DNA of 63,865 nt from Chiloscyllium plagiosum (Eukaryota): assembly GCF_004010195.1 (NCBI RefSeq), contig NC_057746.1:18462187-18526051 (forward strand), in the 5' to 3' direction. Shown piece after piece: positions 22,321 through 62,832 of this stretch. The translations under genes and the position numbers were made by a program. Within the stretch, counting starts at the first letter, position 1. The number at the start of each line of letters is the position of its first letter. The notes beneath the pieces were generated by a model. That model was not told the origin of the DNA. It saw nothing but the letters and a program-made list of their open reading frames with translations, and made no database searches.

Positions 22321-22549
22321 GTGCCTATGACAGTCTGTATCTGCGTTGTGTGACTAACAGATTGTATCTGTGGTGTGCATACATTTGTGCTGTGTCTCTG
22401 TGACAGTCTGTATCGTGTTGTGTGACTAACAGGGTATACCTGTGGTGTGTACGTATCTGTGTTGTGTGTCTATGACAGTGTCTGTGTATGGTGTATGTGA
22501 TTATGTTGTGTGTCTGTAACAGTACTTATCTGCAGCATATGTCTCTATA

Positions 22550-23600
22550 CTGTGTGTCTGTGACAGTCCATATCTGTGTTGTGTGTCTGTGACAGTGTGT
22601 ATTTATGTCGTGTGTCTGTGACAGTGTGTATCTGTGGTGTGTATGTGTCTGTGACAGTGTGTATATGTAGTGTATATCTGTTTGTGTTGTGTGTCTGTGA
22701 CAGTGCATATCTGTGTTGTGTGTCTGTGACAGTGTGTATCTGTGGTGTATATGTGTCTGTGACAGTGTGTATCTGTGGTGTGTATGTGTCTGTGACAGTG
22801 TGTATCTGTGGTGTATATCTGTCTGTGCTGTGTGTCTGTGATGGTCCATATCTGTGTTGTGTGTCTGTGACAGTGTATATCTGTGGTGTATATGTGTCTG
22901 TGACAGTGCGTACCTGTAGTGTATATGTGTCTGTGACAGTGTGTATCTGTAGTGTATATCTGTATGTGTTGTGTGTCTGTGACAGTCCATATCTGTGTTG
23001 TGTGTCTGTGACAGTGTGTATCTGTGGTGTCTATGTGTCTGTGACAGTGCATATCTGTAGTGTATATGTGTCTGTGACAGTGCGTATCTGTAGTGTATAT
23101 GTGTCTGTGACAGTGTGTATCTGTAGTGTATATGTCTCTGTTCTGTGTGTCTGTGACAGTCCATATCTGTGTTGTGTGTCTGTGACAATGTGTATCTGTG
23201 GTGTGTATGTGTCTGTGGCAGTGTGTATCTGTAGTGTATATCTGTTTGCGTTGTGTGTCTGTGACAGTCCATATCTGTGTTGTGTGTCTGTGACAGTGTA
23301 TATCTGTGGTGTATATGTGTCTGTGACAGTGCGTACCTGTAGTGTATATGTGTCTGTGACAGTGTGTATCTGTAGTGTATATGTGTCTGTGTTGTGTGTC
23401 TGTGACAGTCCATATCTGTGTTGTGTGTCTGTGGCAGTGTGTACCTGTGGTGTATATTTGTCTGTGACAGTGTGTATCTGCGGTGTATATCTGTTTGTGT
23501 TGTGTGTCTGTGACAGTGCATATCTGTGTTGTGTGTCTGTGACAGTGTGTATCTGTGGTGTATATGTGTCTGTGTTGTGTGTCTGTGACAGTGTGCATGT
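22550..23600. repeat. Second, composite minisatellite sharing the tctgtgacagt core (about 29-, 33- and 46-bp subunits in mixed order)
   Basis: Subunits such as gtgtctgtgacagtgtgtatctgtggtgtatat and gtgtctgtgacagtccatatctgtgttgt interleave. Confidence 0.9.
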
Positions 23601-29637: not shown

Positions 29638-29680
29638 ATGAACACAAGCCCCATCCTCTGGATATTGGCTGTCTTCTCGG
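29638..29680 (+). CDS. NCR3: Leader (signal peptide) exon, MNTSPILWILAVFS(G), phase-1 donor
   Basis: ATG at 29638 follows a tandem AAG-CAG acceptor and a pyrimidine tract; hydrophobic core; donor TCGG|GTAAGT. Joins the next exon to give ...FSGIGA|ETF, a plausible cleavage site. Confidence 0.85.
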
Positions 29681-32600
29681 GTAAGTAGCATTCCGCTGTT
29701 TACAAAATTTTACGGGTTGGTGTCTGGTGACTGTGCTGGTAAAGGCAATAGTGAACGGTGCAATGGACTAGCAAATCAGACTCAGTGCAAAGACACTGCT
29801 CAACGGTCTCGCTTACTCTGTAATCTGCCACAACCTCACCACGACCTCCCTCGGCTGTTGCAAAACCTTTTTGTTCAGCATTTATAGAATTATACGGCAC
29901 AGAAAAAGACCCTTCAGTCCAACTTGTCCACGCTAGCCAGATATCCCAATCTGACGTAGTCCCGTTTGCCAAATTTGGCTCATAAGACGATAGGAGTTGA
30001 AATTAGGCCATTTGGCCCGTTGAATCTGCTACCCCATTCTATCATGGCTGATTGGTTTTTCAAGCCCATTTTCCTGTTTTCTCCCTATAACCTTTGGTCC
30101 CCTTGGCAGACAATATCCCCTTATCTATGTCTGTTTTAAATATACTCAATGACCTGGCCTCCATAACCCTCTATGGCAATGAATTCCATAGATTTGCTGA
30201 AGAAGCTTCTCCTTATCTAAAAAGTCTTCCCTTTACTCTAAGGCTGTGCCCTCAGGTCCTAGTCTCTCCCACCAAGGGAAACATCTTCCCAACGTCCATT
30301 CTGTCGGGCTGTTCAGTCCTCGGCAAGGTTCAATCAGATCGCCCCCCTCATCCTTCTAAACTCTATTGAATATAGTCCCAAATTCTTCAAACGCTCCTCA
30401 TACGATAAGCCTTTCATTCCTGGGATCAGTACAGGGTTTTACAAAGCACTTTCTAATTGGACCACAATCCTTTCTCAATGGACTTCCTTTTGAAGGATGC
30501 AGTCAGCTTCCTTGCTCAGAGTTGTGATCGAATCTGCCCTTTCAGACAGAGTACATCTCACTAAGTGATAAAGCAGTTAAGTAAATGCTACTGCACATTT
30601 CTCTCATTGAGCTGGTAATTTTCTTATTTATTATAAAGTTGTGATCAATGTAAGCCTCCATGCAAGACTGCCTCTCATAGTTCCAACTTCCAATCACTCC
30701 CTCCCCTCTAACTTTCAGGAATTGGCGCTGAGACGTTCCACGTTGTTCAGAAACTTCCCAGAATTCTGGTGGAGGAGACACAATCAGTCCTCATCCCCTG
30801 CAAATGGACAGGCAATGTCTCCCGGCCAATAGGCTCTTACAGATGGCAGAAGGATGGAAGGAATGGCACGGAAGTTTCTGGTCAGACGGCAGAGTACAGA
30901 GGGCGGGTGCACAGATCCCAAGAGGATTTTTTTAACAGCCAAGATGCCTCGCTATTGCTGAAGGAGTTGAAAGTGACTGATTCCGGGATGTATTATTGCA
31001 GTGTGAAAATAATGGAACTGGGTGAGGAATATGGAGCAGGAACACAGCTCACCGTGAGAGGTAACCGATTCACTTGCCTGCCAATAATATTGACCAATAA
31101 CAAAGCCCTTCATTAGGGCGGCACGGTGGCACAGTGGTTAGCACTGCTGCCTCACAGCGCCAGAGATAGGGGTTCGATTCCACCCTCGGGCGACTGTCTG
31201 TGTGGAGTTTGCACATTCTCCCTGTGTCTGTGTGGGTTTCCTCCCACAGTCCAAAGACGTGCAGGTCAGGTGAATTGGCCATGCTAAATTGCCCTTAGTG
31301 TTGGGTAAATGTAGGGGAATGGGTGGGTGGCGGGTCGGTGTGGACTTGTTGGGCCGAAGGGCCTGTTTCCACACTGTAAGTAATCTAATCTAAACATGCA
31401 TGGTATGAGAATCAACTCCACAGTGCAACAGGCAACTTTTTCTAGCTCTTCGTGCTGAAGTTAAGTGGGGGTCTGTTCAATTATCGGACCTTCATAATAC
31501 CTCAGTTATACATAAATACAATCTTGTACGAGTAATTATGTTGAAGTGCCGGTGTTGGACAAAGTTAAAAATCACAGCAGGTCAGGCAGCATCCGAGGAG
31601 CAGGAAAATTGACTTTTCGGGCAAAAGCACTTCATCAGGACTGCTCCTGCTCCTCAGGTGCTGCCTGACCTGCTGTGCTTTTCCAGCACCACTCTAATCT
31701 CGACTCTGATTTCCAGCATCTGCAGTCCTCACTTTTGCAAAGTTAAAAATCACACAACAGCAAGTTATAGTCCAGCAGGTTGCAACGATTAGTATTAACT
31801 TCTGTGTGGAGTTTGCACATTCTCCCCGTGTCTGCGTGGGTTTCCACTGGGTGCTCTGGTTTCCTCCCACAGTCCGAAGATGTGCAGGTTAGGTGGAATG
31901 GCCATGGGAAATTGTCCGCAGTATCTAGGGATGTGCAGATTAGGTGGATTAGTCTTGGGAAATGCAGATTTAGAGGGACAGGGTAAGGGATTGGTCGGCT
32001 CTTTGGCAGTTCAGCATGGACTCAATGGGCTGAATGGCCTTCTTCCACACTGTAGGGATTCTATTCTAAATTAGCTGTGAAGATATGATCAGTCTTTTGC
32101 AACTTTTCATCTCATCCTGCCATGAGGATCCGGATTATCCACTGTCCCAGATTATAACCGTCAAGCAAGAATTCTATACTTTACATCGCAGCCTGATTAC
32201 CATTTTGAAAATTAACTTGCAAGATTATTCTGAAAATTCTTAAATTGCAGAATTAACAGCTAATTAAATATGTGAATGGAAAGAATAAAGGCATAAAGTC
32301 ACACAGCATGGAAGCTGACCGTTCGGTCCAACCAATCCATGATGGCCATAATCCTAAACTAAATTAGTCCCACCTGCCTGCGCTAGGCCCACATCCCTCC
32401 AAGCATTTCTTATTCAGGTACTTATGTAAATATCCTTCAAACATTGTAACACTACCCGCATCCACTTCCATTGGAAGTTCATTCCACACACTGTATAAAA
32501 AAATTTGCCCCTCATGTCTTTTTTTTAAACTCTCTCTCCTCTCACCTTCGAAATATGCCCCCTAATCTTGAAATCCCCCTACCCTAGGGAATAGACGCCT

Positions 32601-35600
32601 ACCATCTCGACCCCTCATGATTATATAAACCTCTTGTGAAGCCACCTCTCAATGTCCTACGCTCTGGGGAAAAAATGTCCCAGACTACCCCCACCTTTCT
32701 TTATAACTCAAACCTTCCACACCTGGCAACATTCCTGTAAATCTCTTTTGAACCATCTCCAGTTTAATAATATCCTTCCTGTGACAGGGTGACCAGAACT
32801 GCACACAGTATTCCCGAAGAGAAACCTGATTGTCATTTTGAAAGTTAACTGAGGAAAGTATTCTGAAGTTGCAGGAATAACAATTAATTAAATATGCGAT
32901 TGGAAGCAATCGTCATGTTACGGAATGCAAAAGGGGAGAGAATATTCCTCCATTGCTTGAAATGACACGAACCACATTTGGAGTAAGGCATGCAGTTTTA
33001 AATCGGGAAGGATATGTTAGCCTTGGTAGATCACAATCCTGAGTCACCAGTGTGGTCCAGGAGCTTGGTGTTTAAGCTGTCGCACAGTTTTTGAGTTCAT
33101 AAAAAGGGAGAAAAATGTTTCTTTTCGTGGGAGCATCAAGAACTATGGAATGTGATCTCAAAATCAGAGACCGCTAATCAAACAATGAAGACAGGTAGCA
33201 GATTTGGTTGCGAAACTGGGTGGGAATCTGGAACCCTCCTTGGAAAGACTGAAAGCACTGAAACTTGCAAAGGCAGGGTTGATGGATATCACAAGGCGGT
33301 GTTAAAATGGGGTACATAAATAGCCGAGCAGATTGAGTTCAGGTTTAGATCAGCCATAATCTAACCAAATGGTTGACTGGATGCAAGGGGCTGAATGGCC
33401 TCCTGCCTTGACCTGCGTAGCTATCTGACTTTGGCCTCTTTCTTCTCAGCGAAAACAAAAGGTGCCATGACCCTATGGTCATTCCTGTTGATCGGTGCTC
33501 TGGTGAATGGGGCTTTCTTGTTCATTTTTGTGCTCTACTGTGTGAAGTTACGCAGAACGAAAGGTAAGGACATGTATCTTTTTGCTGTTTGGCAGATGTT
33601 AAGGTTGTGAGATATTGTGGTGTGAGCATTTGCATTTGTATTCTTAAGGTTGGATGTATGTAATTGGCACTCCTACTCCCTTTGCTCATCTCTTTAATGT
33701 CCTTCTCCCAAGCTCGAACCATTTGCCATACTGTCCATTTCTCATCGTGCGCACCATCTCTGGGTCAAAATTTTCACCCATCTTCTTTCCCCATTCCAAA
33801 ACACGCACTACTAAAGATCTTAACCATTTAGAATAATCGCGTACAGTTAACCTAGCATGATCCATTTCTCCAAAAACATGAGTAAAATGAATCCATAACC
33901 AACCTGCATATTTAGCAGAGGCTCTCCCTTTCGTTTGACTACATCTATTTAAACCATTTACTTAAACCATCTATTGGATCCCCTCTGTTCTCACGTATCT
34001 CGGTAAATATAGCTTCCTTCATATCTTCCAATTCTTCAGGCTGAGCAGTGGGTAAAGCAGACTGAATCACAGGGCTCACACACACACACTAGCATTAACT
34101 TTACTTCTCTATCAGCGAGGCCACATAAAAGTCTTTGCTGATGAGTGCTTTTTGAAAAAATTCAAAACGGTTTGCAGTGGGTTGAAAAGTGGAAACTGTG
34201 ATGGATCAAACCAAACCGCCTCAACATACTCAGAAGATAGTCCAGACCCTAACTTTTTTTTCTTATTTTAAAGGTAAATGTAAGGTGTTCCGTTCCAGAT
34301 GCAATTCATTTGGTCAAACTGTCAGACTTAAAGTAAAGCAGACTTTATTCATCCACTATGGTTAAAATGCAACAAAACAAAAAAGGAATTGGAATAATAT
34401 CACTCTACTGGAAAACTTAACAGAACAATACATACAGTAACTATTATTAATTAACTGTTCCAATGTAGCAACATCGCATAAACACACCTTTGGTAAAAGG
34501 CAAATTCATACACAGATTGCCTCACATGTAACTCCAGTGACAGGCAGAGACCCCCCCAGCTTATGGCTGTAACCAAGAGACAGGAAAAATAGCTTTCACT
34601 TCTTTAAGACCCCAATAGCAACTGCTGAGAGCTAAAACTGAAAATCCTGGTTCTGTGGGTGCTGGAACACACCCATTCAGGCTGTTTTTATTGTTCCAAC
34701 CTTAAAAACACCCAAGGCCTCACAAGCTGTTTACTCTATTGGCTTTCCAACTAGACAGCTCGATGCCTCTGTCTTAAACCCTCTCTTTCAAAAAAAAGGA
34801 ACAAAATAACCTCTTAAAGCCACACAAAATCTTATTAGCAATTTCCCTTAACTGTGTTACCACAAGTGGGTAGATGATTACTCTCAGTCCTCACTTTGTG
34901 CGATTGGCAGTCATAGAATCATTGGTGCGAGAGCAGGTTTTATGGGTGCTGAGGGCTTCAGTGTCTCAGGAGAGGGAGTTGGGGGTCCCCAGTCATCAGT
35001 ACTCACTGAGCATTCTTTTCTAACTTTCCCAACCTACTCTATAATCACCATTTTCCTCAGACTGAACAGTCCCAACTTCAGGCATTATTCCTTTCTCTAT
35101 TGATAGCTGAGATTTCATGGTGGATCAGTGGTTAGTACTGCTGCCTCACAATGCCTGGGACCTGGGTTCGATTCCAGCCTTGGGTGACTGTGTCTGTGTG
35201 GAGTTTGCACATTCTCCCCGTGTCTGTGTGGGCTTTCTCCGGGTGCTCTGGTTTCTTCCCACAATCCAAAGGTGAGCACGTCAGGGTGAATTGGCTGTGC
35301 TAAATGCCTGTAGTGTTCAGGGATGTGTGTAGACTTAGTGCATTAGTTGGCAGTAAATGTAGAGTAATAGGATAGGGGAATGGGTCTGGGTGGGTTACTC
35401 TTCAGAGGGTCAGTGTGGACTTGTTGGGCTGAAGGGCCTGTTTCCACACTGTAGCGACTCTATAATAAATTTTTTACTTTATAACTTTGAATGGTCAGTC
35501 ACAGAGATTTAACTTCCTCTGTCTACTTGATACAGAACTTTCACATCGGCCTGCAAATTGATGCATTTTCCTTTCAACTCATTTACATTCTGTTTGGCCG

Positions 35601-38600: not shown

Positions 38601-41600
38601 CTCCTGATGCTGCCTGGCGTGCTGTGTTCTCCCAGCCTCCTGCCTGTCTATTCCGACTGCAGCATTCTGGCAGCTGCCTGAGCCTTCTCCCACCCATTTC
38701 ATCTCACTGTTTCAACCCAACCTCCAATGCTTTCTTTCTGAAGTACTTGTCTAGCATTCACGTAAGTGCAACTCAGCAGTTTACCTCAACTGCTCCAACT
38801 CACAGCAATATTTGGTCATGCTGTTGTTGAATCAGTTTCTCCTTGCTGCACTTATTAGCAACTACCTATTTATTGGTAAACTTCACGATCAGAAACGTTT
38901 TATCCATTTTCACCATCAAACACTCTCAGAACTTCTTTTAAGCTGCCCCTTGTTCTATGCTTTCTGCTGACATATTTTGGGGGAAAATAATGAATTTAAG
39001 ACAATCATTTGCATATTTACTGTCTTTATTTTGTCTGTCGTGTGTAGTGAATAATTTTGTGTCATTGATTATTCTGAAGTGTAGTTACTACAGATCCATG
39101 CACAAAACTGGCATTGATTAATAATAAGATATTAGTAATAAAAAATGTCTTTTGTAATCCACTATTTTGTTATATCCCTTTGTAGGTGCTCAGTGGGCTC
39201 AACGGTGAGTGAGTATCAGCAGATACACATTTAACGATTAAGAAATGCACTCTGTTTGCAGTTGAAGTGGTTGACGGATCCATCGACAGTTTAGCAGCAA
39301 ATCCTTTTCATGCAGGGTCTCTGCGACCCATTTTCTGGAAGGCTGGAGGAGCCTGAAACTCTTCTCAGACTTGAGTAGGGTCTCCTTGCACTTGAGGTGC
39401 CCCCCCCATTCGACAAAGTTAAAGGTCAAGGGTTGGGAAGTTAGAGTCGGCCAGGAAACCCACCTTATCTCAACAGACATGATGGGCTGAATGGTCTTCC
39501 CTCTGCTTTAAATATAAAGTTAAAAATCACACAACGCCACATTATAGTCCAACAGGTTTATTTGGAAGCACTAGCTTTCGGAGCGCTGCTCCGTCACCAG
39601 GTGGTTGTGGAGTATAAGACACCTATTCTTCACAACCACCTAATGATGGAACAGCGCTCTGAAAGCTAATGCTTCCCAATAAACCTGTTGGCCTGTAACC
39701 TGGTGTTGTGTGATTTTTAACTTTGTACACCCCAGTCCAACACCGGCATCTCCAAATCATGACTGCTTTAAATACACCCACATTTCTGGTGAGAGCAAAT
39801 GTGAGAGCAAATGTGGTTGAGTTCTTTCCTTTTCTTGTTTTGCAGACCATACAGAGTTATTTCAGAAATTACCTCTGTGGATAGTAAGTAAATCTGATTT
39901 TTGTTACACTGGAGAATAATATATTACCTATATATGGTTATGAAGACCTGCAAAATTACCAAGATTCTAATTTTGAAATGATTGAGAAGTTTCCAGGTTG
40001 ACACCTGCGTTGTGATTCAGAAAGAAAGTCCTCAATTCAGATTTCTCAAACATTACACATGTCCTAACTCATTTAATGACTTTTTGGAAATCTATTTTCA
40101 CAAGGATTTACCTTTCAGTCAATTGCATCTCATTTATCAGAAGGTATCGCTTTATGTTTGCTCTTCTATTGAACAAAGTTCCCATCTTTGTTGATAATTA
40201 CAATTTCTGTCTTTTAAGAGTTTTTTTAGTCATAGAGCGATAGAGTCAAATAGCACGGAAACAGACCCTTCAGTCCAACCAGTCATGCCGACCATAATCC
40301 TAAACTAAACTAGTCCCATTTGCCTGCTCCTGGCCCATATCTCCAAACCTTTCCTATTCCTGTACTGATCCAAGTGTCCTTTAAGTGTTTCAACTGAACC
40401 CGCATCCACCACTTCCTCAGGAAGTTCATTTCACATGTGTGTAAATAATTGCCCCTCGTGTCTTTTTAAAATTTATCTCATCTCAACTGAAAAACATGCC
40501 CTTTACTCTTGAAATGCCATACAGTTCCAGAAATATGGATAAGAATGTTGCTGAAAAAAATTAGTCTTGCACCCATTAGGACAATTCGCAAGAAATGCTA
40601 ATGTAAATAGCAAACCTATTGTATATTATTATATTGTATGAGAGAAGATGCTGATTAGTTAGCAAATTATCTCTAAGTTGTAGAATGAACTGGAAGAAAG
40701 TTAGCCACCAGGATACACGAACACCAGCTAGCCACAAAAAGACACAACCCTCTCTCCCTCGTAGCCCCACACACAGATGAAAAAAAACACCATTTCAACT
40801 GGGACAACACATCTATCCTGGGACAGGCTAAGCAAAGACATGCCAGAGAATTCCTAGAGGCCTGGCACTCCAACCACAACGCCATAAACAAACACATAGA
40901 TCTAGATACCATCTATCAACCCCTCAGAAAACGAACAGGAAATGACATCACCACAAACCCCAGGAACCCCATCCTGGACAAACATATAAATAGAAAGCAG
41001 GAGACAACAGCTTCGCTTCACTTGGAGGTCGCCACTGATGATGTTACCCAGCCAGGTAATGAAACGTCTGGATATCAAACCTACAGCTCAGCGAGCAAAC
41101 CTGGTTCTGGATGATTGACAGTTAACTGCCAAGGTTTCATTAAACTTTCAACCAGGCTATTTGACCCTGGCCGTTGCTCGGAGAAATTATCCTAAAAATG
41201 ACTGTGACTTATTTTGTTAAGTTGAAACTGGTGCAGTTTGTGTTCTTTCTATCTGCAAGGCTTGTGTCTTAACATATCTAGCTTCAAGAATGCATGAATG
41301 AGTCAAAGTGCAAACCCAACAGATAATCAAAAATTGGTTGTTAGTGTAATTCGTCACATAATCAGAATTACATAACAAATGTTTCCCAATCACACTTAAT
41401 GTTGGGCACTGTGTTGTGAGGTTTGCAAGTGTAGATAGGTTGAATACTTTTCTTGTTTCAAGAAGTTGGAGGGGTTAGAGGGTTACGGAAAAAGGGCTGC
41501 AGAGTGGGACTAGCTGGGTAGCTCTTTCAGCAGCCAGTACAGCTGCAATGGGTCGAATGGCCTCCTACTGTACATTAAGATTCTATGCTTCTAAGATCTG

Positions 41601-50600: not shown

Positions 50601-53600
50601 NNNNNNNNNNNNNNNNNNNNNNNNNNNNNNNNNNNNNNNNNNNNNNNNNNNNNNNNNNNNNNNNNNNNNNNNNNNNNNNNNNNNNNNNNNNNNNNGACTC
50701 TCTGTAGTTTCTCGCAGTGTTGGGAAAAGCAGTTACCAAACTGTGATGCATCCAGATAGAATGCTTTCTATAGTACATCTATAAAAATTGTTAAGAGAAT
50801 CCCTCATTGAAAAGTGACCAGCAGCACAGTGCAAGTTAGCTGGGCAATTATTTGGATGAGAAAGGCTATGGCAATCCAGGAATTATTCGACATTATAGAA
50901 ATGTAAGGACAGGCCATTCAACCCTTCTGGGCTATTCTATCAGACAATTAGAAAATGGCCCAACTGGATCGAAAACAAATCTGCTATTTTTCAAACAGTC
51001 ATCCTAACTCTCACAAATAGAGCATCAATCTATTATTCCTAATACCGTGCTGTGCCTTAGTGTGTTGAACTCCACTGACCTTTTCTTACCTACTGCATTT
51101 TGTTCTTGCAGATTGCCAAAGATCTGCACCCAAACAACAGGTAAGCAATAATCTAAAATGCATGCTTCATCAACAAACCATACATGTGCGATCTTTAGTT
51201 GCAATGATTTCACAAGCACATCTCTCACCATTGATAGATTTTACTTAATCCATGCTGTTCCGGCTCAGACTGCCTTTCAAATTCATAACCTTTAAGAACC
51301 CAAACAGTTACACTTTTCAACAAATTTCAGATTGAGATTTTCTGCAGTACCAATAGCAGACCGTAGGACGTGTGTAAATTGGCTGGCTTTCATAAGTTAG
51401 CAAACTGAACAGCTACCAAACCAGATTGACATGACTTGAAAATAAAATGTTCAGCACACTCTGCTTAAAGATGATGAGACATTGGCAAAGATAGGGAAAG
51501 GGATACAGGGCCAAGAATCAATATCCTTTTAAAATTAAATATCAAATCTCTTTATTATATCCCTCCACCAACTTTCTGCTTCAGCAAAAATGCACTCAGA
51601 TCTTAGAAGATAATCCCTACAGTGCGGAAACAGGCCATTCAGCCCATCAACTCTACACTAGCTCTCCAAAGAGCATCCCACCCAGACCCATCCCCACTAC
51701 CCTATCCCTGTATTCCCCATAGCTAATCCACCCTAACCTGCACATCCCTGAACACTATGGGGCAATTTAGCATGGCCAATCCACCCTAACCTGCACATCT
51801 TTGGACTGTGGGAAGAACTCAGAGCACCAAGAGAAAACCCACACAGGGAGAACGTGCAAACTCCACGCAGTCAACAGAGGGTTGCATCAAATGTGGGTCC
51901 CTGGCACTGTGAGGCAGCAGTGCTAACCACTGAGCCACAGTGCCAACCCTTAATTGAACTCATCTACACCTTTAAAGCTTAGTTGCATTTCTTGACCATT
52001 ACTGTCTCAAAATCACTTACATTTTAACAAGCTTCCTTTCTCAATCTCAATTGAAAAAGCTGGTCACTTGCAGAAACTTTATTTAACCAAAGAGCGTAGA
52101 ATATGGTCAATTTAGTCTAACGTAACATTTCTGTTTAATTAGACAACTTCATCAGCCAATATACATTACGCAACGTTAAAGTTAGACGAGGCTGCTAATG
52201 GATCATCTATTCTGAACTTGATTGTGGAAGGCAATGATTTAGAGTGAGTCAAAATTTTCTCTTATTGAAATGACTCAGATGTAATATACACCTTACTCAT
52301 TGACGCTGTAATTACTGGGGGCTGGGGGGGTTGTCCCTTTAAAAAATTATTCATCACTTCTACAGTGTTGTAACTATCTCCGTTAAGGAGTCAACAATTT
52401 TCACTCAATATAGCATTAATAAAAAGGTTGTTCGAGACACACAATTCCTGTTGAAAACTGTCCTTTCTGTAATTAGCATCAGCCTGAAAGTCAATATTGA
52501 TTTCTGTGACAGATAGTGGCCACCAGGTGACATGCTGGAATGCATTCATTGTTTGGTGACTTCTGTCAACCATGTGATTGCAGTGGGTTGACAATGAGTC
52601 CAATCCTTCCCAAATTCTGGGAATTAGCCATAATTGCTGACCAATGCTTGGTCGCTGCCGCATGGATTTCCTGGATCCCATTGAGGAGAGGGAAACAAAC
52701 ACATCCGAACTGTGGTATGGTCTGATGAACTGAAAAACCCAAGTGTGTTGGCATTCCCAAAGACCTACATACTGACCACTGGTGGACAGTATAGGTATAA
52801 CTACCCAAACGCTCTAGGTCAGATCCATGACATCAAGCTGGTGTTCTTCTCTGACCACTGCCTCCTGGCCAACTGTCACCTACAGGGCGAGCAGCGGGCT
52901 GGTAAGGGAACGTGGAAGCTGAACACAAAGCTGTTGACCCCAGGAAACAGTGAGGACCTCAAGAGGGACTACGCAGGTTGGAGAACCGTGAAGCCCCTCT
53001 TTGAGTCTCCAGCAGACTGGTGGGAAACAGTAAAAGGGAACATCAAGAGGTTCTTCATCCTTAAAGGTGTTCAGGAGGCGAGAGAGAGGCGGAGAAAACT
53101 GTCCCAGCTCCAGGAAAGTATGCAAAACCTGCTCCTGCTGCAGACGATGGGGATGGATGTCACGGAGGACCTCAAGGAGGTGAAGGGCCAGCAAGCCTCA
53201 CTCTTTGCCTCGGAGGCCTCCAAGATAATCTTCCGGTCCAGGGTCCGCTCGGTGGAGCAGGACGAGACGTGCTCACGTTTCTTCTTCCAGAAGGTGCACA
53301 AAGAGAGCTCTGTGCTCAGCAACCTGAAGGAAGAAGATGGCTCGCTAATGTCATCTCAGGCTGACGTCATGAGGATCAGTAAATCCTTCTATGCCAGTCT
53401 GTATGACGCGAAGCCAACCGACAGCACGGCCTCCCAGTCGTTCCGGTCCTCTATCACGGAGGTCTTAGATGACAGAACACACGAGAGGCTGGACTAGTCG
53501 CTATCTCTGGACGAGCTGACCAAGGCCCTCGAGTCCTTCGAAAAGAATAAAACTCCCGGAAGCGACAGCTTAGCGGTTGAGCTCTATTCCGCTCTGTGGG

Positions 53601-56600: not shown

Positions 56601-59600
56601 GTTAAACCTTACAGTGCATGTGTTGTTGTCAGGTCAGGAGATTCAGGAAGCCAACTTTGCACTCCTGAATCTATCCTGAAAGATCCTGGAATATCATGAG
56701 CTGTCTCAGTCAAAATCTACCGCATAGTTTCTACAGTGTTGCACTGTGTGACAGCAAAACAGGGAGTATTTTTTTTCACATTGTTGACAGCCTGTTGAAC
56801 TATCAATGTGGATTCCTGAAGAAGGGCTTATGCCCGAAACGTCGATTCTCCTGTTCCTTGGATGCTGCCTGACCTGCTGCGCTTTTTCAGCAACACATTT
56901 TCAGCTCTGAACTATCAATATGCCAAGATATCTCAATGCAGTGCAAGTAGCTCTTGTAAAGCCATCCCAGGGTATTATTTTGCACATCTTCAGGTTCATC
57001 AGCATTTTCATAACTACAAGTAACAGCAATGACTATGCTACACTATATGACTATGTTCGGTTCTGCAAATAAAATGTAAAGATTGTGTCGATACTATGGC
57101 TTTATGAGGTGTAGTTTGTCCTGTTTCTTTCTGAGAGGTTTCAAGGCACATACACCAAGCAGTCTACGCAGAACCACCAGATTAAGCAGTTTGTGAGGCC
57201 TTGGGTTTTGTTTTAAAGTTGGAACAATAGAAGCAGCATGAATGGGTGGGGGTCAAACTCCTTTAGAACCAGGACTTATCATTTCAGTAGAAGTTGCTGC
57301 TGGGCTCTTGTAGATGTGGATGCTGGTTTTTTTTTTCCCTCTCCCTGTTACAGTGAAAAGCTAGCGTTATGTTCCTGCTGTTAGAATTGCATACTAGTCA
57401 ATCTTATTTTTTTAATTTGCCTTTGTAAAGGGGGTCTTTATGGGATGTTAATATATTGGAACAGTTAATTAGTAATATATACTGTATCTATTATTTGGTT
57501 AAGCATTTTGATAGAGTTACAGGTAAGCTGATTCTTTTCTTTATTTTTTTTCTTTGGTTGTATTTTAACTATCGTACATGAATAAAGTGTGTTTTTCCTC
57601 AAATCTGATAGTTTGACCAGTTGATTTGCATCTGGAACCTTAAATTTACCTTTAACTTAAGAAAAGGTTAGCATCTAGGCCACCTTCTTAATATATTTTG
57701 AGGGGATTTGGTCTGGTCCATAACAAGACTGAAAAAATGCGGCTTTATTGAAATAAAATGGAGCACAGTGATTGTTTGGGTAGGCTGAAGGTGTTTTTTT
57801 TTGGAACACAAGGCCTGAGTTTCTGAGGCTTTTTTGTTTAAGTACAACATTTTAGATGCTGACAATCATCTTCGAACTTTTCATTCCTTGATGTGTATTT
57901 TATTCTGATGGTTATAAAATCTTCCCCTCCTTTTGCAGGCATGATTATGGATATGACGAGCTTAATGTAACAGGTAACTAACAAGAAAATATATATTTTG
58001 GGGCAGCTGCATGGTTTATTATATCTTGTAACCTTTTATATTGTAACCTCAAGCGACTGAGGCAAACAGTGACTAGTTCAATATGGTTTTGCTGTCCCTG
58101 ATGACAATAACTACCTATTTATTGGTGCAGGATTTTGTTGTGGGTGAAACAGGCGGTATCCCAGAGTCAGTTGAGTGAAATGCTGAATGATTAGATATTT
58201 CCGATATCTTCCCAAGAAGACAAGCTTCAATCCCTATTTGCCAGAGCAGAAACTGGATACAATTTGACCTTCCTTGCTGGTATCACTCAGAGTGATGTAA
58301 AGCAACAGGAGACTGAAGTGACAGTGCTGATTATGGAGAGACTGCTACTGTCTTGTCTAAAGATCCCTTTACTGATGCTGGTTACTGTTATCATACAAAT
58401 CACTAACTCCTGTTTAGCTCCCTTTGAAATATTTGCCCAGATGTATCAGTCTCTTTGGTGCAATTTGCATATTTTCCTATTTACATTTGAAGATAGTGCT
58501 AAATTAAAGTGATCTGTAACCTTGCTGCAGTGGTGATGTCAGCAAGCAACTTAATCAACTATTCCATTTGAAGTATTCTCGCAGCCGGCAATGTTGAAAT
58601 TTAAATTAAGAATCTCTTCATCTACGATTTTAAAAATTGATAAAATAAGGATACACTTTTTAAAAAATCATTTGAACATGTACAGGGCAGCACAGTGGCT
58701 CAGTGGTTAACACTGCTGCCTCATGGCGCCAGGGAACTGGGTTCGACTCCAGCTCCAGGCAACTGTCTGTGTGGGGTTTGCACATTCTCCCCGTGTCTGC
58801 CTGCGTTTCCTCTGGGTGCTGCAGTTTCCTCCTACAATCCAAAGATGTGCAGGTTCGGGTGGAATGGCCGTGCTAAATTGTCCCATAGTGTTCAGGCATG
58901 TGTAGGTTAGGTGCATTAGACGGTGGAAATGTAAAGTAATAGGGTGGGGGAATGGGTCTTGGTGAAGATAGAACATTACAGTGCAGTCCAGGCCCTTTGG
59001 CCCTTAATACTGCACCAATCTGAAGGCCATCTAACCTGCAATATTCCATGATTATCCAATAACCATTTAAATACTCTTAAAGTTGGCGAGCCTACTGCAG
59101 TTGCAGGCAGGACATTCCATGCCCTTACTGCTCTCTGAGTAAAGAACTTATCTCTGACGTCTGTCCTATATCTATCATCCCTCTTCAGAGGGTCGGTGTG
59201 GACCTATTGGGCTTGTTTCCACACTGCAAGGATTCTGTGATTTTCTTTTCTCATTCTGGAGAAATTTGAGATACCCCAACAAATAAAGTCTCTTCAGTGT
59301 CAGCAAATAAGTTATTTCCAAGTGAAAGCTGGGTCATTTCTCTTCAAAGAAGGTGTATTTTAGGCATTTGTGTTACCCCCACGTCGCTGGAGTGAAATCG
59401 AATCCCCACAGCGGCAACTTCTGGGTCTCCCACATTATTCAGCACATAGAGTAATGTAATCTAATCTAATCTAGAAGGGGTAAATGTAGGGGTATGGGTG
59501 GGTTACGCTTCGGCGGGTCGGTATGGACTTGTTGGGCCGAAGGGCCTGTTTCCACACTGTAATGTAATGTAATGTAAAAAAATGTAAAAGAGTCATACAG

Positions 59601-62163
59601 CCAACCAGTCCATGCCGATCGTAATCCCAAACTAAACTAGTCCCACCTGGCCCACATCCCTCCAAACCTTTTCTATTCATGTCTCTATCCAAATGTCTTT
59701 TAAACATTGGAATTGTTTACACATCCACCACTTCCTCATAATGTGCACTCCACACATGAACCACCCTCCGTGTAAAACCAAAATCGCCTCATGTCTTTGT
59801 TTAAAATCCCTCTGCTCTAACCTTAAAAATATGCCCCATAGTCTTGAAGCTTCCCAACTTAGGGAAAAGCCAACTACCATCAACTCTACCTATGCCTCAC
59901 ATTATTTTATAAACTTCTACCAGGTCACCTCTCAACTTCCTACATCCTTGTGAAAAAGGTCCCAGCCTATCCAGCCTTCCTTTATAACCCAAACCCTCCA
60001 TACCCAGCAACATCCTGGTAACTCATGTACCATTTCCTGAAGATAATGTCAGTTGCAGTGCAGTCATGATGACGATAGTGAAAGCTAACAGCGCCGCTGT
60101 CATTACCACTTCAAAACTGACCGAGTTTAAATGATACCTCTTTGTGTAATTAAATTCATTTCATAGTGCATTCAATGTCAACAGGGCCGCCTTTTTATTA
60201 ACCATCACTCGTAGCTAATTGTGGCATCAGTTTTTTTTAAAGATTAGATTCCCTACAGTACGGAAACAGGCCCTTCGGCCCAACAAGTCCACACCGAGTC
60301 TCCGAAGAGCAACCCACCCAAATCCATTCCCCTACATTTATCCCTGACTAATGCACCTAACACTATGAGCAATTTAGCATGGCCAATTCACCTAAACTGC
60401 ACATCTTTGGACTGATTTGGAGATGCCGGTGTTGGACTGGGGTGGACAAAGTTAAAAATCACACAACACCAGGTTACAGTCCAACAGGTTTAATTGGAAG
60501 CACTAGCTTTCAGAGTAGCTCGAAAAGCTAGTGTGCTTCCAATTAAACCTGTTGGACTATAACCTGGTGTTGTGTGACTTTCATCTTTGGACTGTGGGAG
60601 GAAAACGGAGCACCCGGAGGAAATCCACACAGACACTGGGAGAATGTGCATACTCCACACAGACAGTCACCCGAGGCTGGAATCGAACCTGGGGCCCTGG
60701 TGCTGTGAGGTAGCAGTGCTGACCACTGAGCCACCGTGCTGCCTTTCTTGTGATAATAATTCTCCCATCACATTGCTCGATTCATTAGTCAGGATTTTGA
60801 TACCACGCCTATTAAAAACGTTCATATATATCCAAGAAGATAACCTGTCCCTTGGCATTTATGCTGTCACGATCTTGCACCTGTCATAGAATGATATCAC
60901 ATGGAATGAGGCCATTCAGGTCATTATACCAGTGCAAGCGCTTTCAAAGAGCTGCCCAATTAACCCCACTTACCTGCAACTCTGCAGGAAAACTTTAGAT
61001 TAGATTCCCTACAAAATGAAAACAGGTCCTTCGGCCCAACAAGTCCACGTCAACCTTCCGAAGAGTTACCCACCCAGACCCATTTCCCTCACCTATATTT
61101 ACCCCTGACTAATGCACCAATCACTACGGGCAATTTAGCATCGCCAATTCACCTAAACTGCACATCTTTGGACTGTGGGAAAAAAACCCACGCAGACACA
61201 GGGAGAATGTGCAAACTCCACACAGACAGTTGCCTGAGGCAGGAATCGAACCTGGGTCACTGGTGCTGTGAGGTAGCAGCGCTAACCACTGAGCCACCGT
61301 TTGAACAAGACCTTGAACAATTAAACTGCAAATGTTCTGAACCAAATTCCTGACGTGTTCTTTAAAATTGGTGTGGTGTCAGTGCAAATTTAATGGATAA
61401 ACGATTTTACACAAATGTTTGAGACAGTTTCCTGATGGGATTGAGACATAAAGCTAATTACTTGTACTTTTCTCACATTCAATTCTCAGTGAAACGTTGT
61501 CCTATACCTGAAAGTGCATCAAAGGATGAGGTAAGAGAACAGAGACAGTGCCCTTCTTGTGTAACATTTACTTCAACAAATATGACCTGGTTCCAATTAA
61601 AGCTTGCTGTCTAATTGGCATCTGCAGAAGGTGGTAACTGGCAGTTGGAAAGTAGGTGCAAGATGGCATTCATTTCAGGAAAAGCTTTGTTCTGTTTAAC
61701 GAAACTGAAAAGATGGATCCGGCCAACTGGAGTTACTCATCCATTATCTGTTGATCATGCAGCATTTATATGGTCCCTTCAAAACGTGTTTTGATTAGTG
61801 CACTCAACAGAATTATTCATATTCAATATTATCTCATCAAATTGGAAATGGATCAACACAGAAAACTGGGAATATGCTGAACTATTGGAGAAGTACAACT
61901 GGGAAAAATAGACAGATATGCAAATTGTGATTCTCACCTGTTTGATGCTAAAGAGCAAATTGTATTGAACTTGCTGTTTGCATTTTGTAATTAAAGCAAA
62001 CTCTATGCACCCTGTATTAACACGAAAAGCAATAGGATGGGGGGTTTGTGAGGGTCTCTTTAACCAGTGTTCAACTGTACTCCTTAACCATCTTTCCTAT
62101 TCATAATTTGTGCAGGAAAATGGAGAAAATTCTCACCAGTGCGCTGAAGTGGTGAATCTATAG
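29638..62163 (+). CDS. NCR3: NCR3/NKp30-family single VJ-type IgSF receptor (multi-exon: leader, IgV, TM, up to 8 cytoplasmic exons); predicted 223, 249 or 270 aa depending on how exon 46530 is used
   Basis: Exons 29638-29680, 30719-31060, 33450-33563, 39186-39204, 39846-39883, 45856-45896, 46530-(46592 or 46604), 51112-51140, 57939-57973, 61490-61530 and 62116-62163 have AG acceptors and join in frame with matching phases. All donors are GT except the one at 46593. The V domain matches the NKp30 pattern from memory; orthology versus family paralog cannot be resolved here. Confidence 0.75.
30719..31060 (+). CDS. NCR3: VJ-type Ig V-set domain exon (NKp30-like)
   Basis: Acceptor ctctaactttcag|GA. 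Translates GIGAETFHVVQKLPRILVEETQSVLIPCKWTGNVSRPIGSYRWQKDGRNGTEVSGQTAEYRGRVHRSQEDFFNSQDASLLLKELKVTDSGMYYCSVKIMELGEEYGAGTQLTVR, with B-strand Cys, C-strand Trp, DxGxYxC and a J-like YGAGTQLTV in one exon. Shares IGS.W..D, G.EV...T.E.RGR and LG...G.GT.L.V with NKp30. Two N-glycosylation sequons (NVS, NGT). Donor AGAG|GTAACC, phase 1. Confidence 0.93.
31116..31392 (+). mobile_element. HE1-like V-SINE, full length, 55 bp downstream of the V exon
   Basis: gggcggcacggtggcacagtggttagcactgctgcctcacagcgcc head with A/B boxes, V-domain, (taatc) tail. Confidence 0.9.
31577..31737. mobile_element. Penelope-like terminal-repeat insertion nested in a second Penelope-like family fragment
   Basis: 17-bp TSD caaagttaaaaatcaca at 31560-31576 and 31738-31754. 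Confidence 0.75.
32295..32820 (-). mobile_element. CR1-like 3' fragment
   Basis: EYCVQFWSP..KDIIKLEMVQKRFTGMLPG on minus. Confidence 0.8.
33450..33563 (+). CDS. NCR3: Stalk and transmembrane exon AKTKGAMTLWSFLLIGALVNGAFLFIFVLYCVKLRRTK
   Basis: Acceptor ctctttcttctcag|, phase 1 to 1, donor AAAG|GTAAGG; hydrophobic stretch of about 24 residues followed by basic stop-transfer KLRRTK. Confidence 0.88.
34197..34826 (-). mobile_element. Solo LTR-like element (probably Gypsy-type)
   Basis: TG...CA termini, near-TSD aaac/aaat, internal AATAAA on minus; similar in reverse to 57092-57725. Confidence 0.6.
35118..35465 (+). mobile_element. HE1-like V-SINE
   Basis: Head, V-domain and tail match the other copies. 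Confidence 0.85.
35870..37760 (+). mobile_element. Cluster of three CR1-like 3' fragments (35870-36310, 36455-36950, 37270-37760)
   Basis: Repeated L.EVYKIMRG / FTQRV..VWNELP motifs and CR1 3' UTRs. Confidence 0.8.
39186..39204 (+). CDS. NCR3: Cytoplasmic micro-exon A1 (19 nt, GAQWAQR), phase 1 to 2
   Basis: tatccctttgtag| acceptor and CAACG|GTGAGT donor in unique sequence; phase fits both neighbours. Confidence 0.7.
39515..39762. mobile_element. Palindromic insertion of a third Penelope-like terminal-repeat family, in the A1-A2 intron
   Basis: Inverted arms (aaagttaaaaatcacacaac.../...gttgtgtgatttttaacttt); 12-bp TSD ctgctttaaata at 39503-39514 and 39763-39774; degenerate hammerhead cores. 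Confidence 0.7.
39846..39883 (+). CDS. NCR3: Cytoplasmic exon A2 (38 nt, PYRVISEITSVD), phase 2 to 1
   Basis: Long pyrimidine tract ttctttccttttcttgttttgcag|; donor GATA|GTAAGT; contains YxxI. Confidence 0.75.
40690..41101 (+). mobile_element. Penelope-like GIY-YIG 3' fragment
   Basis: Nearly identical to 47545-47955; contains hammerhead motif at 41035-41068. Confidence 0.85.
41690..41995 (+). mobile_element. HE1-like V-SINE
   Basis: tggcacagtggctcagtgattagcactgct head; V-domain. Confidence 0.8.
42555..43815 (-). mobile_element. Penelope-like retroelement spanning a gap
   Basis: Minus-strand RT motifs (GVAMGT.MGPSYA, PFLDLSIS) at 43510-43800; terminal repeat with intact hammerhead core at 42652-42679. 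Confidence 0.8.
42790..43507. other. Assembly gap
   Basis: Run of N. Confidence 1.
44225..45150 (-). mobile_element. Two CR1-like 3' fragments in tandem
   Basis: LYKALVRPFL..; FTERVVRVWNELPEEVV; 3' UTRs. Confidence 0.8.
45856..45896 (+). CDS. NCR3: Cytoplasmic exon A3 (41 nt, NFVTLCAQDGAQDL), phase 1 to 0
   Basis: gcttttgtcttttag| acceptor; CTG|GTAAGT donor; open in the required frame. Confidence 0.72.
46530..46604 (+). CDS. NCR3: Cytoplasmic exon A4 (DNKVASTRYSAVLLSTGLNIK[GSD*]) with ITSM-type TxYxxV; terminal by read-through, or internal if 46593 is a donor
   Basis: gatttgtgttctag| acceptor, phase 0; TRYSAV motif; AAG|GGAAGT donor-like site at 46592/46593; TAA at 46602-46604. Confidence 0.7.
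   Translation, partial: DNKVASTRYSAVLLSTGLNIKGSD
46861..47965. mobile_element. Penelope-like element as a roughly 500-bp inverted duplication of the GIY-YIG endonuclease region
   Basis: ORFs 46883-47398(-) and 47318-47932(+) both encode NVIYKIPCKDCHKHY.GQTGRKLATRIHEH; 13-bp TSD accaaatt(g/a)cagc at 46848-46860 and 47966-47978. Confidence 0.9.
47889..47922 (+). ncRNA. Minimal type I hammerhead ribozyme motif (family 2); copies also at 41035-41068(+), 46938-46971(-), 1486-1519(-)
   Basis: CUGAUGA-U-GUUACC-cagcca-GGUAAU-GAAAC-GUC. Confidence 0.6.
49471..49498 (+). ncRNA. Minimal type I hammerhead ribozyme motif (Penelope-associated, family 1)
   Basis: CUGAUGA-A-GGGC-uuuu-GCCC-GAAAC-GUC: conserved core boxes, 4-bp stem II, palindromic ACGU in place of stem III. 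Confidence 0.65.
50196..50695. other. Assembly gap (exactly 500 N, possibly a placeholder size)
   Basis: Run of N between tail modules A and B. Confidence 1.
51112..51140 (+). CDS. NCR3: Cytoplasmic exon B1 (29 nt, IAKDLHPNNR if phase 0 to 2)
   Basis: Strong acceptor gcattttgttcttgcag| and donor CAG|GTAAGC in unique sequence. Open in all three frames, so the frame is inferred from neighbours. Confidence 0.65.
51605..51945 (-). mobile_element. HE1-like V-SINE
   Basis: Reverse complement of the SINE consensus seen in this window. Confidence 0.8.
52820..55646 (+). mobile_element. Tx1/L1-clade LINE, 5'-truncated ORF2 with stops, spanning a gap
   Basis: Endonuclease end FSDH..WKLN; RT motifs NWRPISLLNVDYKILSK, DQEKAFDRI, GVRQGCPLS, YMDD; C-terminal CPRSGC...ETVTHLLLEC knuckle; AATAAA and poly(A) at about 55614-55646. 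Confidence 0.9.
54298..54972. other. Assembly gap
   Basis: Run of N inside the Tx1-like element. Confidence 1.
56808..56907 (+). mobile_element. Single Penelope-like terminal repeat with hammerhead motif
   Basis: 12-bp TSD tgaactatcaat at 56796-56807 and 56908-56919; CTGAAGA-A-GGGC-ttat-GCCC-GAAACGTC. Confidence 0.8.
57092..57725 (+). mobile_element. Solo LTR-like element, same family as 34197-34826
   Basis: Shares atggcttta.gagg start, gtgaggccttggg, ggaacagttaattagtaata, AATAAA (57581) and ggtctggtccataaca end. Confidence 0.6.
57939..57973 (+). CDS. NCR3: Cytoplasmic exon B2 (35 nt, HDYGYDELNVT), phase 2 to 1
   Basis: cttcccctccttttgcag| acceptor; CAG|GTAACT donor; contains YxxL (YDEL); same phases as A2. 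Confidence 0.7.
58685..59240 (+). mobile_element. HE1-like V-SINE interrupted by a minus-strand CR1 3' end
   Basis: SINE head and V-domain 58685-58965; CR1 tail in reverse at about 58968-59182; SINE 3' end resumes. Confidence 0.75.
59590..60020 (-). mobile_element. CR1-like 3' fragment
   Basis: Same 3' UTR and ORF2 end as the other CR1 copies. Confidence 0.75.
60240..60740 (-). mobile_element. HE1-like SINE with a nested palindromic Penelope-like insertion (60415-60581)
   Basis: 13-bp TSD catctttggactg at 60402-60414 and 60582-60594. Confidence 0.8.
60995..61300 (-). mobile_element. HE1-like V-SINE
   Basis: Reverse complement of the SINE consensus seen in this window. Confidence 0.8.
61490..61530 (+). 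CDS. NCR3: Cytoplasmic exon B3 (41 nt, VKRCPIPESASKDE), phase 1 to 0
   Basis: ttttctcacattcaattctcag| acceptor; GAG|GTAAGA donor; same length and phases as A3. Confidence 0.7.
62116..62163 (+). CDS. NCR3: Terminal coding exon B4 (ENGENSHQCAEVVNL*)
   Basis: ctttcctattcataatttgtgcag| acceptor, phase 0; aligns by eye with A4 (DNKVASTRYSAV vs ENGENSHQCAEV); TAG at 62161-62163; followed by unique UTR-like sequence and AATAAA. Confidence 0.62.
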   Translation, partial: ENGENSHQCAEVVNL

Positions 62164-62826: not shown

Positions 62827-62832
62827 AATAAA
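62827..62832 (+). terminator. Candidate polyadenylation signal of the NCR3-like gene
   Basis: AATAAA about 660 nt after the B4 stop, followed by a GU/U-rich stretch (tgtgttgtatatgttccgtgtactgtagtgttgtgttc). Confidence 0.5.

What the first reader, a model, noticed from the sequence alone, without database searches (positions are those of the whole stretch)
29638..62163. Shark NKp30/NCR3-family receptor with an uncharged TM and a long, tyrosine-motif cytoplasmic tail
Seen: leader, VJ-type IgV and TM exons in phase, then eight small exons of 19-75 nt that chain in frame. The TM has no Arg, Lys, Asp or Glu (only an Asn). The tail carries YRVI, TRYSAV and YDEL. Established: mammalian NKp30 has a short tail and signals through a TM arginine that pairs with CD3zeta/FcRgamma; shark NCR3 genes form a divergent, MHC-linked family. 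Inference: this member signals through its own tail and could be an inhibitory or switch-type counterpart to activating NKp30, making a paired-receptor system. The tail exons are too small to appear in the ORF track and gene predictors could miss them.
Basis: partly seen in the sequence, partly recalled or inferred. Interest (0 to 1): 0.85.

Follow-up and report, generated by a model that had tools for sequence, protein, structure and literature searches.

The report
Shark NKp30-like inhibitory receptor gene

Summary
The gene is real. It is LOC122541166 of Chiloscyllium plagiosum. The leader, VJ-type IgV and TM exons are in phase as described. The V domain is NKp30-like: profile E 2.4e-20 against human NKp30, next best 1.4e-8.

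Collinear matches to orthologue proteins give nine visible small exons of 19-101 nt. Phase arithmetic requires a tenth. It is unseen and probably lies in the gap at 50196-50695.

- YDEL is real and conserved.
- YRVI is species-specific: Asp or Val in the closest relatives.
- The TRYSAV exon has a GG donor and no homologue.
Both are conserved in 5 of 5 relatives.

NCBI's 220-aa model reads two exons out of frame and stops early.

An inhibitory function is inferred, not shown. Shark NCR3 families are published, and ITIM-bearing and Lys/Arg-TM members are in databases. First readers noted six other NKp30-like loci in this genome (unchecked). Verdict: a new member of a known kind.

The parts
29638..29680 (+). 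E1: start codon and leader (MNTSPILWILAVFS), phase 0 to 1
   Evidence: Donor CGG|gtaagt. Exact match to P0003 residues 1-15.
30719..31060 (+). E2: VJ-type IgV domain, 342 nt, phase 1 to 1, with the J-like strand YGAGTQLTV
   Evidence: V-set, E 2.4e-12; human NKp30, E 1.1e-10; profile E 2.4e-20. 109 of 113 residues match C. punctatum P0153.
33450..33563 (+). E3: short stalk, TM without R/K/D/E (Asn at 33506-33508), stop-transfer KLRRTK, phase 1 to 1
   Evidence: 89.7% identical over 39 residues to P0153.
39186..39204 (+). E4: 19 nt, (G)AQWAQ(R), phase 1 to 2
   Evidence: The same peptide is in P0153. Sites: tag|GTG and ACG|gtgagt.
39846..39883 (+). E5: 38 nt, PYRVISEITSVD, phase 2 to 1. It holds YRVI, whose Tyr is not conserved.
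   Evidence: P0153 has PDRVISE and P0159 has QVQVVSE.
45856..45896 (+). E6: 41 nt, (N)FVTLCAQDGAQDL, phase 1 to 0
46530..46592 (+). Probably not an exon.
   Evidence: It is in none of the fetched relatives. 246 of 300 shuffles score as high or higher.
48332..48433 (+). Cassette acceptor and read-through (NQYAGLLESDALC...). There is no in-frame GT donor, and an in-frame TAA lies at 48407-48409 where C. punctatum codes Glu.
   Evidence: The cassette is optional in H. francisci isoforms X5 and X6.
48434..48477 (+). E7: 44 nt, VGSEEETSIYIPME, phase 0 to 2. YxxM motif at 48458-48472.
   Evidence: IY.PM is present in 5 of 5 relatives aligned.
50196..50695 (.). Assembly gap 2. It is the likely place of unseen exon E8 (length 2 mod 3; about 13 residues in relatives). 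The gap was not filled.
   Evidence: Phase break E7 out 2 / E9 in 1. No match above background in the read letters 48478-50195 and 50696-51111: best score 23 against a background of 19-35.
51112..51140 (+). E9: 29 nt, read in phase 1 as CQRSAPKQQ, out in phase 0. NCBI's model reads it in phase 0 as IAKDLHPNN.
   Evidence: (match to DCQSSAPKRQ of P0153).
52143..52243 (+). E10: 101 nt, TTSSANIHYATLKLDEAANGSSILNLIVEGNDL, phase 0 to 2. Canonical ITIM IHYATL at 52161-52178.
   Evidence: P0004, E 0.011; P0153, E 1.7e-14, 97%. NCBI's model reads it out of frame and stops at IYITQR.
57939..57973 (+). E11: 35 nt, HDYGYDELNVT, phase 2 to 1. YDEL at 57952-57963.
   Evidence: (100% over 11 residues). Y[DE]EL is present in 5 of 5 relatives.
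61490..61530 (+). E12: 41 nt, (V)KRCPIPESASKDE, phase 1 to 0
   Evidence: The same 14 residues are in P0153.
62116..62163 (+). E13: ENGENSHQCAEVVNL and stop TAG. AATAAA signals at 62827 and 63124.
   Evidence: (93% over 15 residues).

Best explanation
This is a single-V member of the shark NKp30/NCR3 family, LOC122541166 of Chiloscyllium plagiosum.

Shown by sequence: the coding chain is leader, germline-joined VJ-type IgV, a TM with no basic residue, and ten small tail exons. Nine are visible and one is unseen, probably in gap 2. With E8 counted as in the relatives, the chain encodes about 310 residues, about 150 of them cytoplasmic. The tail carries three tyrosine motifs kept in sharks and a ray: YxxM (IYIPM), a canonical ITIM (IHYATL) and, 30 residues later, YDEL.

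Inferred mechanism: the V domain binds a B7H6-like or other ligand. Without a TM Arg or Lys, the receptor cannot borrow CD3zeta/FcRgamma-type ITAM adaptors. Instead, Src-family kinases phosphorylate its own tail. The ITIM and the downstream YxxL then recruit tandem-SH2 phosphatases (SHP-1/SHP-2) and damp activation. The YxxM could add PI3K-type input, as in CD28-family or BTLA-type co-receptors.

The public 220-aa model is an annotation artefact caused by the unseen exon.
For: - V domain: the best solved relatives are the four human NKp30 sequences. A single-sequence search gives E 1.1e-10 against 1.6e-7 for the next hit. A profile of five shark V domains gives 2.4e-20 against 1.4e-8, with no CD28, CTLA4 or PD-1 among the 60 rows shown.
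- The nearest named relatives are NCR3 or NCR3-like proteins of Stegostoma, nurse shark, Callorhinchus, lungfish, frog and turtle.
- Exons: every visible exon has AG/GT sites and consistent phases.
- The exons match, in order, C. punctatum XP_072406317.1 (E 2.4e-22 for the cassette plus E7, 1.7e-14 for E10, 100% for E11). They also match Stegostoma, Scyliorhinus, Heterodontus and Mobula proteins.
- The E10/E11 junction reproduces the relatives' ...DLE|HDYGYDEL.
- The three tyrosine motifs are each present in 5 of 5 relatives aligned.
- No TM in the clade has Arg or Lys in its core.
Against: - There is no transcript evidence for this species.
- E8 is unseen, so an intact frame cannot be shown.
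- If the strong acceptor at 48332 is used, the frame hits TAA at 48407-48409 before any conserved tyrosine.
- The relatives are mostly automated RefSeq models, and I could not see their support.
- YxxM and YxxL can also signal positively.
- YDEL lacks the hydrophobic -2 residue of a strict ITIM in Mobula (DGYDEL).
- The mid-TM position is Glu in Stegostoma and Heterodontus, so 'uncharged TM' is not a clade-wide rule.
Confidence: 0.72

Rival explanations
1. In this species the gene is a tail-less or decaying copy. Splicing uses the acceptor at 48332, meets the TAA at 48407-48409, and yields a receptor with a V domain, a TM and about 65 tail residues but none of the conserved tyrosine motifs. 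Alternatively, E8 has been lost and the frame is broken. Such a protein would act as a signalling-dead decoy or not at all.
For: - The acceptor at 48332 has the better pyrimidine tract.
- No in-frame GT donor follows the cassette.
- Both C. punctatum models read through this stretch, which is open there.
- E8 was not found in the read letters.
Against: - All nine visible tail exons downstream and upstream keep canonical sites, open frames and 86-100% identity to the sister species. That is unexpected if the tail were unused.
- The acceptor at 48434 is the one used in the Stegostoma and Heterodontus models.
- The TAA may be a polymorphism or a base error.
Confidence: 0.17
2. The tail is mainly co-stimulatory or activating. 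The YxxM (IYIPM) recruits PI3K as in CD28, ICOS or DAP10, and YDEL acts as a half-ITAM. The receptor would then be an adaptor-independent activating form.
For: IY.PM is conserved in 5 of 5 relatives, and Y[DE]EL fits YxxL. The roles assigned to these motifs come from general knowledge and were not tested here.
Against: A canonical ITIM is equally conserved and lies 30 residues before YDEL. From general knowledge, that spacing is typical of tandem-SH2 phosphatase docking. No YxxL-x(6-8)-YxxL ITAM is present.
Confidence: 0.12
3. The public model XP_043533719.1 is right: a 220-residue protein whose tail ends ...IAKDLHPNNRQLHQPIYITQR.
For: It is the RefSeq model. Its exons map exactly to the window.
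Against: - Its last two exons are read in frames that match no relative. The other frames of the same DNA match C. punctatum at E 1.7e-14 and S. canicula at E 0.011.
- It skips E7, which relatives keep.
- It ignores E11-E13, which are 93-100% identical to the sister species.
Confidence: 0.05
4. One reading: the TRYSAV exon is included and gives an ITSM-type switch motif.
For: The stretch is open in phase 0, is 63 nt long (so frame-neutral), and follows a usable acceptor.
Against: - The donor is GG, not GT.
- It is absent from all fetched relatives, including three Heterodontus isoforms.
- Its similarity to the family is below the shuffle median: 24 against 26, with 246 of 300 shuffles as high or higher.
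Confidence: 0.04

Closest known systems
Human NKp30 / NCR3 (PDB 3NOI, 3PV6, 6YJP, 9FWW)
   Same: A single VJ-type IgV ectodomain. It is the best solved relative by a margin of 12 orders of magnitude in the profile search. It is a type I membrane protein.
   Different: Human NKp30 has a TM arginine that pairs with TCR-zeta/FcRgamma (passage read in PMC5371597) and, from recall, a short tail. The shark gene has no basic TM residue. It has a tail of about 150 residues spread over ten small exons, with an ITIM, a YxxM and a YDEL.
Orthologue or close paralogue models: C. punctatum XP_072406317.1 and Stegostoma tigrinum LOC132206215 (P0159). More distant: S. canicula LOC119975535, H. francisci XP_067865377/8, Mobula hypostoma LOC134346462.
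   Same: The same V domain (109 of 113 residues with C. punctatum), the same order of tail segments and the same three tyrosine motifs.
   Different: - All are named 'uncharacterized protein'.
- C. punctatum reads through the cassette without a stop. Its model also carries a 46-residue N-terminal extension.
- Heterodontus has three copies of the E4/E5-like unit.
- S. canicula and Mobula have two V domains.
Nurse shark NCR3 family (Kinlein et al. 2021, Immunogenetics 73:333; e.g. QTT61898.1, QTT61904.1)
   Same: The same divergent VJ-type family. The V domain is 40% and 35% identical. Members occur with uncharged TMs and with a Lys in the TM.
   Different: The two members retrieved have short tails (28 and 3 residues) and lack the three-motif tail. 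Whether that paper describes an orthologue of this gene or its ITIMs I could not check: the paper is not held. Only its citation and, from recall, its abstract are known to me.
ITIM-type inhibitory IgSF co-receptors (PD-1, BTLA, SIRPalpha), by function only
   Same: An IgV ectodomain, a TM without a basic residue, and a tail with an ITIM plus a second tyrosine motif about 25-30 residues later. BTLA and the CD28 family also carry a further adaptor-binding tyrosine motif (general knowledge).
   Different: No sequence relationship of the tail was found: the Atlas search of the tail gave only one low hit, at 0.76. The second motif is YDEL, not TxYxx[VI]. Nothing was tested biochemically.

Membership tests
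NKp30 / NCR3 family | V-set Ig domain with a germline-joined J-like G strand (GxGTxLxV) | tested here: met
   Pfam V-set, E 2.4e-12. YGAGTQLTV ends the single V exon.
NKp30 / NCR3 family | The V domain is closer to NKp30 than to other V families | tested here: met
   - PDB: NKp30 at 1.1e-10 against TCR mu at 1.6e-7.
- Profile: 2.4e-20 against 1.4e-8.
- Nearest named proteins are NCR3 or NCR3-like.
- No tree with outgroups was built.
NKp30 / NCR3 family | Basic TM residue for pairing with CD3zeta/FcRgamma (mammalian NKp30) | tested here: not met
   The TM core has no R or K, only Asn. This feature defines the mammalian activating form, not the shark family, which has both kinds.
NKp30 / NCR3 family | MHC linkage | not tested
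   No MHC gene was recognised in the window. The only lead is unchecked first-reader notes of NCR3-like genes nearby and one next to AIF1 about 8 Mb away.
NKp30 / NCR3 family | Binds B7H6 | not testable with these tools
   Needs a binding assay.
ITIM-bearing inhibitory receptors (a functional class) | (I/V/L/S)xYxx(L/V/I) in the cytoplasmic tail | tested here: met
   IHYATL at 52161-52178 in E10. The motif definition is recalled.
ITIM-bearing inhibitory receptors (a functional class) | The motif is conserved in relatives | tested here: met
   5 of 5: IHYATL, VQYATL, VQYATI, IQYTEI, IQYAVI.
ITIM-bearing inhibitory receptors (a functional class) | The tail is actually expressed on the receptor in this species | tested here: inconclusive
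ITIM-bearing inhibitory receptors (a functional class) | Phosphotyrosine-dependent SHP-1/SHP-2/SHIP recruitment and inhibition | not testable with these tools
   Needs biochemistry.

The most novel reading that the evidence does not exclude
Elasmobranchs keep a distinct NKp30-family lineage with three defining features. The tail (YxxM, ITIM, YDEL), split over about ten micro-exons, has been conserved since sharks and rays diverged. A polar mid-membrane residue (N/H/E/E/Q) is also conserved. Cassette exons tune the tail. On this reading it would be an ancient checkpoint-type arm of the NKp30 axis that mammals lost, leaving them only the adaptor-coupled activating form. In C. plagiosum, a single-base stop in the cassette read-through would make acceptor choice at 48332 versus 48434 an on/off switch for the whole signalling tail.
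Probability: 0.25. Interest if true: 0.6.

Novelty: new member of a known kind. Interest (0 to 1): 0.3.

Why it matters
- It corrects a public gene model. XP_043533719.1 is truncated by frame errors around an assembly gap.
- It shows that one lineage of shark NKp30-like receptors carries a conserved three-tyrosine tail with a canonical ITIM.
- It gives concrete splice junctions and peptides for testing inhibitory versus activating NKp30-family signalling at the base of jawed vertebrates.

It does not change the picture of the family. Divergent shark NCR3 genes are published, and ITIM-bearing and Lys/Arg-TM members are already in sequence databases.

Tried and rejected
- RNA evidence. The look-up of sequencing runs listed no RNA holder. 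It did list two single-cell polyA raw-read runs of the same species. I laid them, with two other runs, on the 3' part of the gene.
Splice sites, and the position of E8 in other species, could not be compared at the DNA level.
- Tail family. The Atlas search of the C. punctatum tail gave one hit at 0.76 and structural rows with TM 0.22-0.33. This is uninformative, as expected for a disordered tail.
- The search for homologous proteins with the V exon alone saw only 3 candidates because of its length window. With tails as the query it returned 3 and 4 proteins.
- Literature. Kinlein 2021, Flajnik 2012 and Ohta & Flajnik 2015 are not held. Four full-text searches found no held paper describing the tails or ITIMs of shark NCR3. 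This says nothing about the papers not held. Supplements were not asked for.
- Rejected: the 75-nt alternative acceptor for E6 at 45822, because relatives show ...VD|N|FVTL.
- Rejected: a weak FSNS match at 50988-51008 as E8 (background score; sequence read).
- Not done: a V-domain tree, because no true outgroup sequences could be fetched by id.
- Not done: the joined spliced protein was never built or searched. Every exon was translated, searched and aligned on its own.

Full report
**What is there.** The leader (29638-29680), a 342-nt V exon (30719-31060) and a 114-nt TM exon (33450-33563) have canonical splice sites and all join in phase 1. The V exon ends in the J-like strand YGAGTQLTV. 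The TM core has no R, K, D or E; its one polar residue is Asn at 33506-33508. It is the only V domain in the window.

**Family.**
- Pfam calls the exon V-set, E 2.4e-12.
- Among solved structures, the four human NKp30 sequences lead at E 1.1e-10, ahead of TCR mu at 1.6e-7.
- A profile of five shark V domains widens the gap to 2.4e-20 against 1.4e-8 for VNAR. No CD28, CTLA4 or PD-1 appears in the 60 rows shown.
- Hits that carry names are NCR3 or NCR3-like proteins from Stegostoma, nurse shark (QTT61898.1), Callorhinchus, lungfish, a frog and a turtle. Some are auto-named SIRP-like.
I built no tree, for lack of fetchable outgroups.

**Identity of the gene.** A search of 1.84 billion representatives found a 220-aa protein that is 100% identical over the V exon. 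It is XP_043533719.1, 'uncharacterized protein LOC122541166', of Chiloscyllium plagiosum. Its exons map exactly to 29638, 30721, 33449, 39188, 39847, 45858, 51112 and 52144, and it stops at ...IYITQR.

**Orthologue-guided chain.** The same 90% cluster holds C. punctatum XP_072406317.1, 390 aa. Stegostoma LOC132206215, S. canicula LOC119975535, H. francisci isoforms X2/X5/X6 and Mobula LOC134346462 have the same kind of tail. tblastn of these tails on the window, reading the sites by eye and a phase table give the following exons:

| Exon | Coordinates | Length (nt) | Peptide or motif | Phase |
|---|---|---|---|---|
| E4 | 39186-39204 | 19 | AQWAQ | 1>2 |
| E5 | 39846-39883 | 38 | PYRVISEITSVD | 2>1 |
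| E6 | 45856-45896 | 41 | FVTLCAQDGAQDL | 1>0 |
| E7 | 48434-48477 | 44 | holds IYIPM | 0>2 |
| E9 | 51112-51140 | 29 | CQRSAPKQQ | 1>0 |
| E10 | 52143-52243 | 101 | holds IHYATL | 0>2 |
| E11 | 57939-57973 | 35 | HDYGYDELNVT | 2>1 |
| E12 | 61490-61530 | 41 | KRCPIPESASKDE | 1>0 |
| E13 | 62116-62163 | 48 | ends in TAG | 0 |

- All have AG/GT sites.
- Aligned as separate rows, the exons fall in order along the relatives' tails. The exception is the 9-residue E9, which MAFFT misplaced; tblastn places it.
- I never joined the exons into one protein.

**The gaps.**
- Gap 1 (42790-43507) lies in the E5-E6 intron, and gap 3 (54298-54972) in the E10-E11 intron. Gap 3 has a reverse-transcriptase ORF just upstream.
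- Phases fit across both, and relatives have no residues between those exons.
- The E7-E9 interval holds gap 2 (50196-50695) and does not fit: E7 leaves phase 2 and E9 needs phase 1.
- Relatives have about 13 residues there. With the split codons, that is an exon of length 2 mod 3.
- A Smith-Waterman scan of the read letters on both sides found nothing above background: best score 23, against 19-35 in 33 control chunks.
- So E8 is either in the gap or lost.
- This explains NCBI's model. Lacking E8, it skips E7, reads E9 and E10 out of frame and stops early.

- YRVI exists, but its Tyr is Asp in C. punctatum and Val in Stegostoma.
- The TRYSAV stretch (46530-46592) has donor AAG|ggaagt. It is in none of the fetched relatives and scores below the shuffle median.
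- YDEL is real and conserved.
- In the five relatives aligned, IY.PM, [IV].Y..[LI] and Y[DE]EL are each present in 5 of 5.
- A three-V Heterodontus protein, P0001, has IDTPM instead and ends soon after.
- Chaining in frame is weak evidence. The interval holds 4436 open AG..GT segments of 19-75 nt.

**Open problems.**
- A cassette acceptor at 48332 (NQYAGLLESDALC) has no in-frame GT donor. Both C. punctatum models read through to E7. In the window that read-through meets TAA at 48407-48409.
- Heterodontus isoform X6 skips the cassette, and Stegostoma splices it normally. A join of 45896>48434 would therefore give the full tail, and use of 48332 a tail with no conserved tyrosine.
- No RNA evidence could be obtained.

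**Mechanism (inferred).** There is no basic TM residue, so no pairing of the kind described for NKp30 with TCR-zeta/FcRgamma (passage read in PMC5371597). Signalling would go through the receptor's own tail, with the ITIM and a YxxL 30 residues later as a phosphatase dock. A YxxM may modulate this. The mid-TM residue is polar throughout the clade: N, H, E, E and Q in the five TMs aligned. This is unexplained.

**Known or new.**
- The shark NCR3 family is published. I saw Kinlein 2021 only as a citation. Its abstract I recall only, and I could not read the text.
- Databases already hold nurse shark NCR3 with Lys in the TM (QTT61904.1) and C. plagiosum XP_043533794.1 with Arg in the TM.
- They also hold ITIM-bearing NCR3-like proteins of Heterodontus and C. 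punctatum.
- First readers noted six other NKp30-like loci in this genome (unchecked).
- The finding is a real, mis-annotated member of a known family. The interest is modest.

Noticed in passing
window 13398-13535 (+): This stretch matches the first 46 residues of the C. punctatum model at 93%. The peptide also matches several other places in the window, so it is repeat-derived. Either a 5' exon lies about 16 kb upstream of the ATG, or that model's N-terminal extension is an artefact.
   Followed up: no
window 33506-33508 and the aligned TM column in alignment A1: The mid-membrane residue is polar in all five TMs aligned: Asn here, His in C. punctatum, Glu in Stegostoma and Heterodontus, Gln in Mobula. 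It may mediate TM association. It is not the basic residue of activating receptors.
   Followed up: partly
window 21048-23593: Large minisatellite arrays: 48-nt unit x 26.5 copies at 94% match, then 141-nt unit x 7.2 copies. They create long spurious ORFs on both strands.
   Followed up: partly
window 46883-47398 (-) and 47318-47932 (+): Two overlapping, inverted ORFs of 171 and 204 aa encode near-identical proteins. They lie in the E6-E7 interval, downstream of the TRYSAV stretch. Similar fragments lie near 1830-1943 and 40989-41036. There was no Pfam hit. It looks like a transposable element.
   Followed up: partly
window 53749-54156 (+) and 24209-24790 (+): Reverse-transcriptase (RVT_1) ORF fragments, E 2.5e-17 and 1e-12. 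The first lies just upstream of gap 3, inside the E10-E11 intron.
   Followed up: yes
P0032 (XP_043533794.1, C. plagiosum): A two-V, VJ-type family member with Arg in the TM and a 17-residue tail. For it and for this gene's product the collection lists a longest contig of the same length (35,007,441), which suggests the same scaffold. Its V resembles Heterodontus P0114, which has an uncharged TM and two ITIMs. That is an activating/inhibitory pair in a different subfamily.
   Followed up: partly
P0011, P0151, P0154 (H. francisci): The unit corresponding to E4 plus E5 (..Q.QRQ.TDIPE.TS..) occurs three times in tandem in the Heterodontus tail. Two cassette segments distinguish isoforms X2, X5 and X6.
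   Followed up: no
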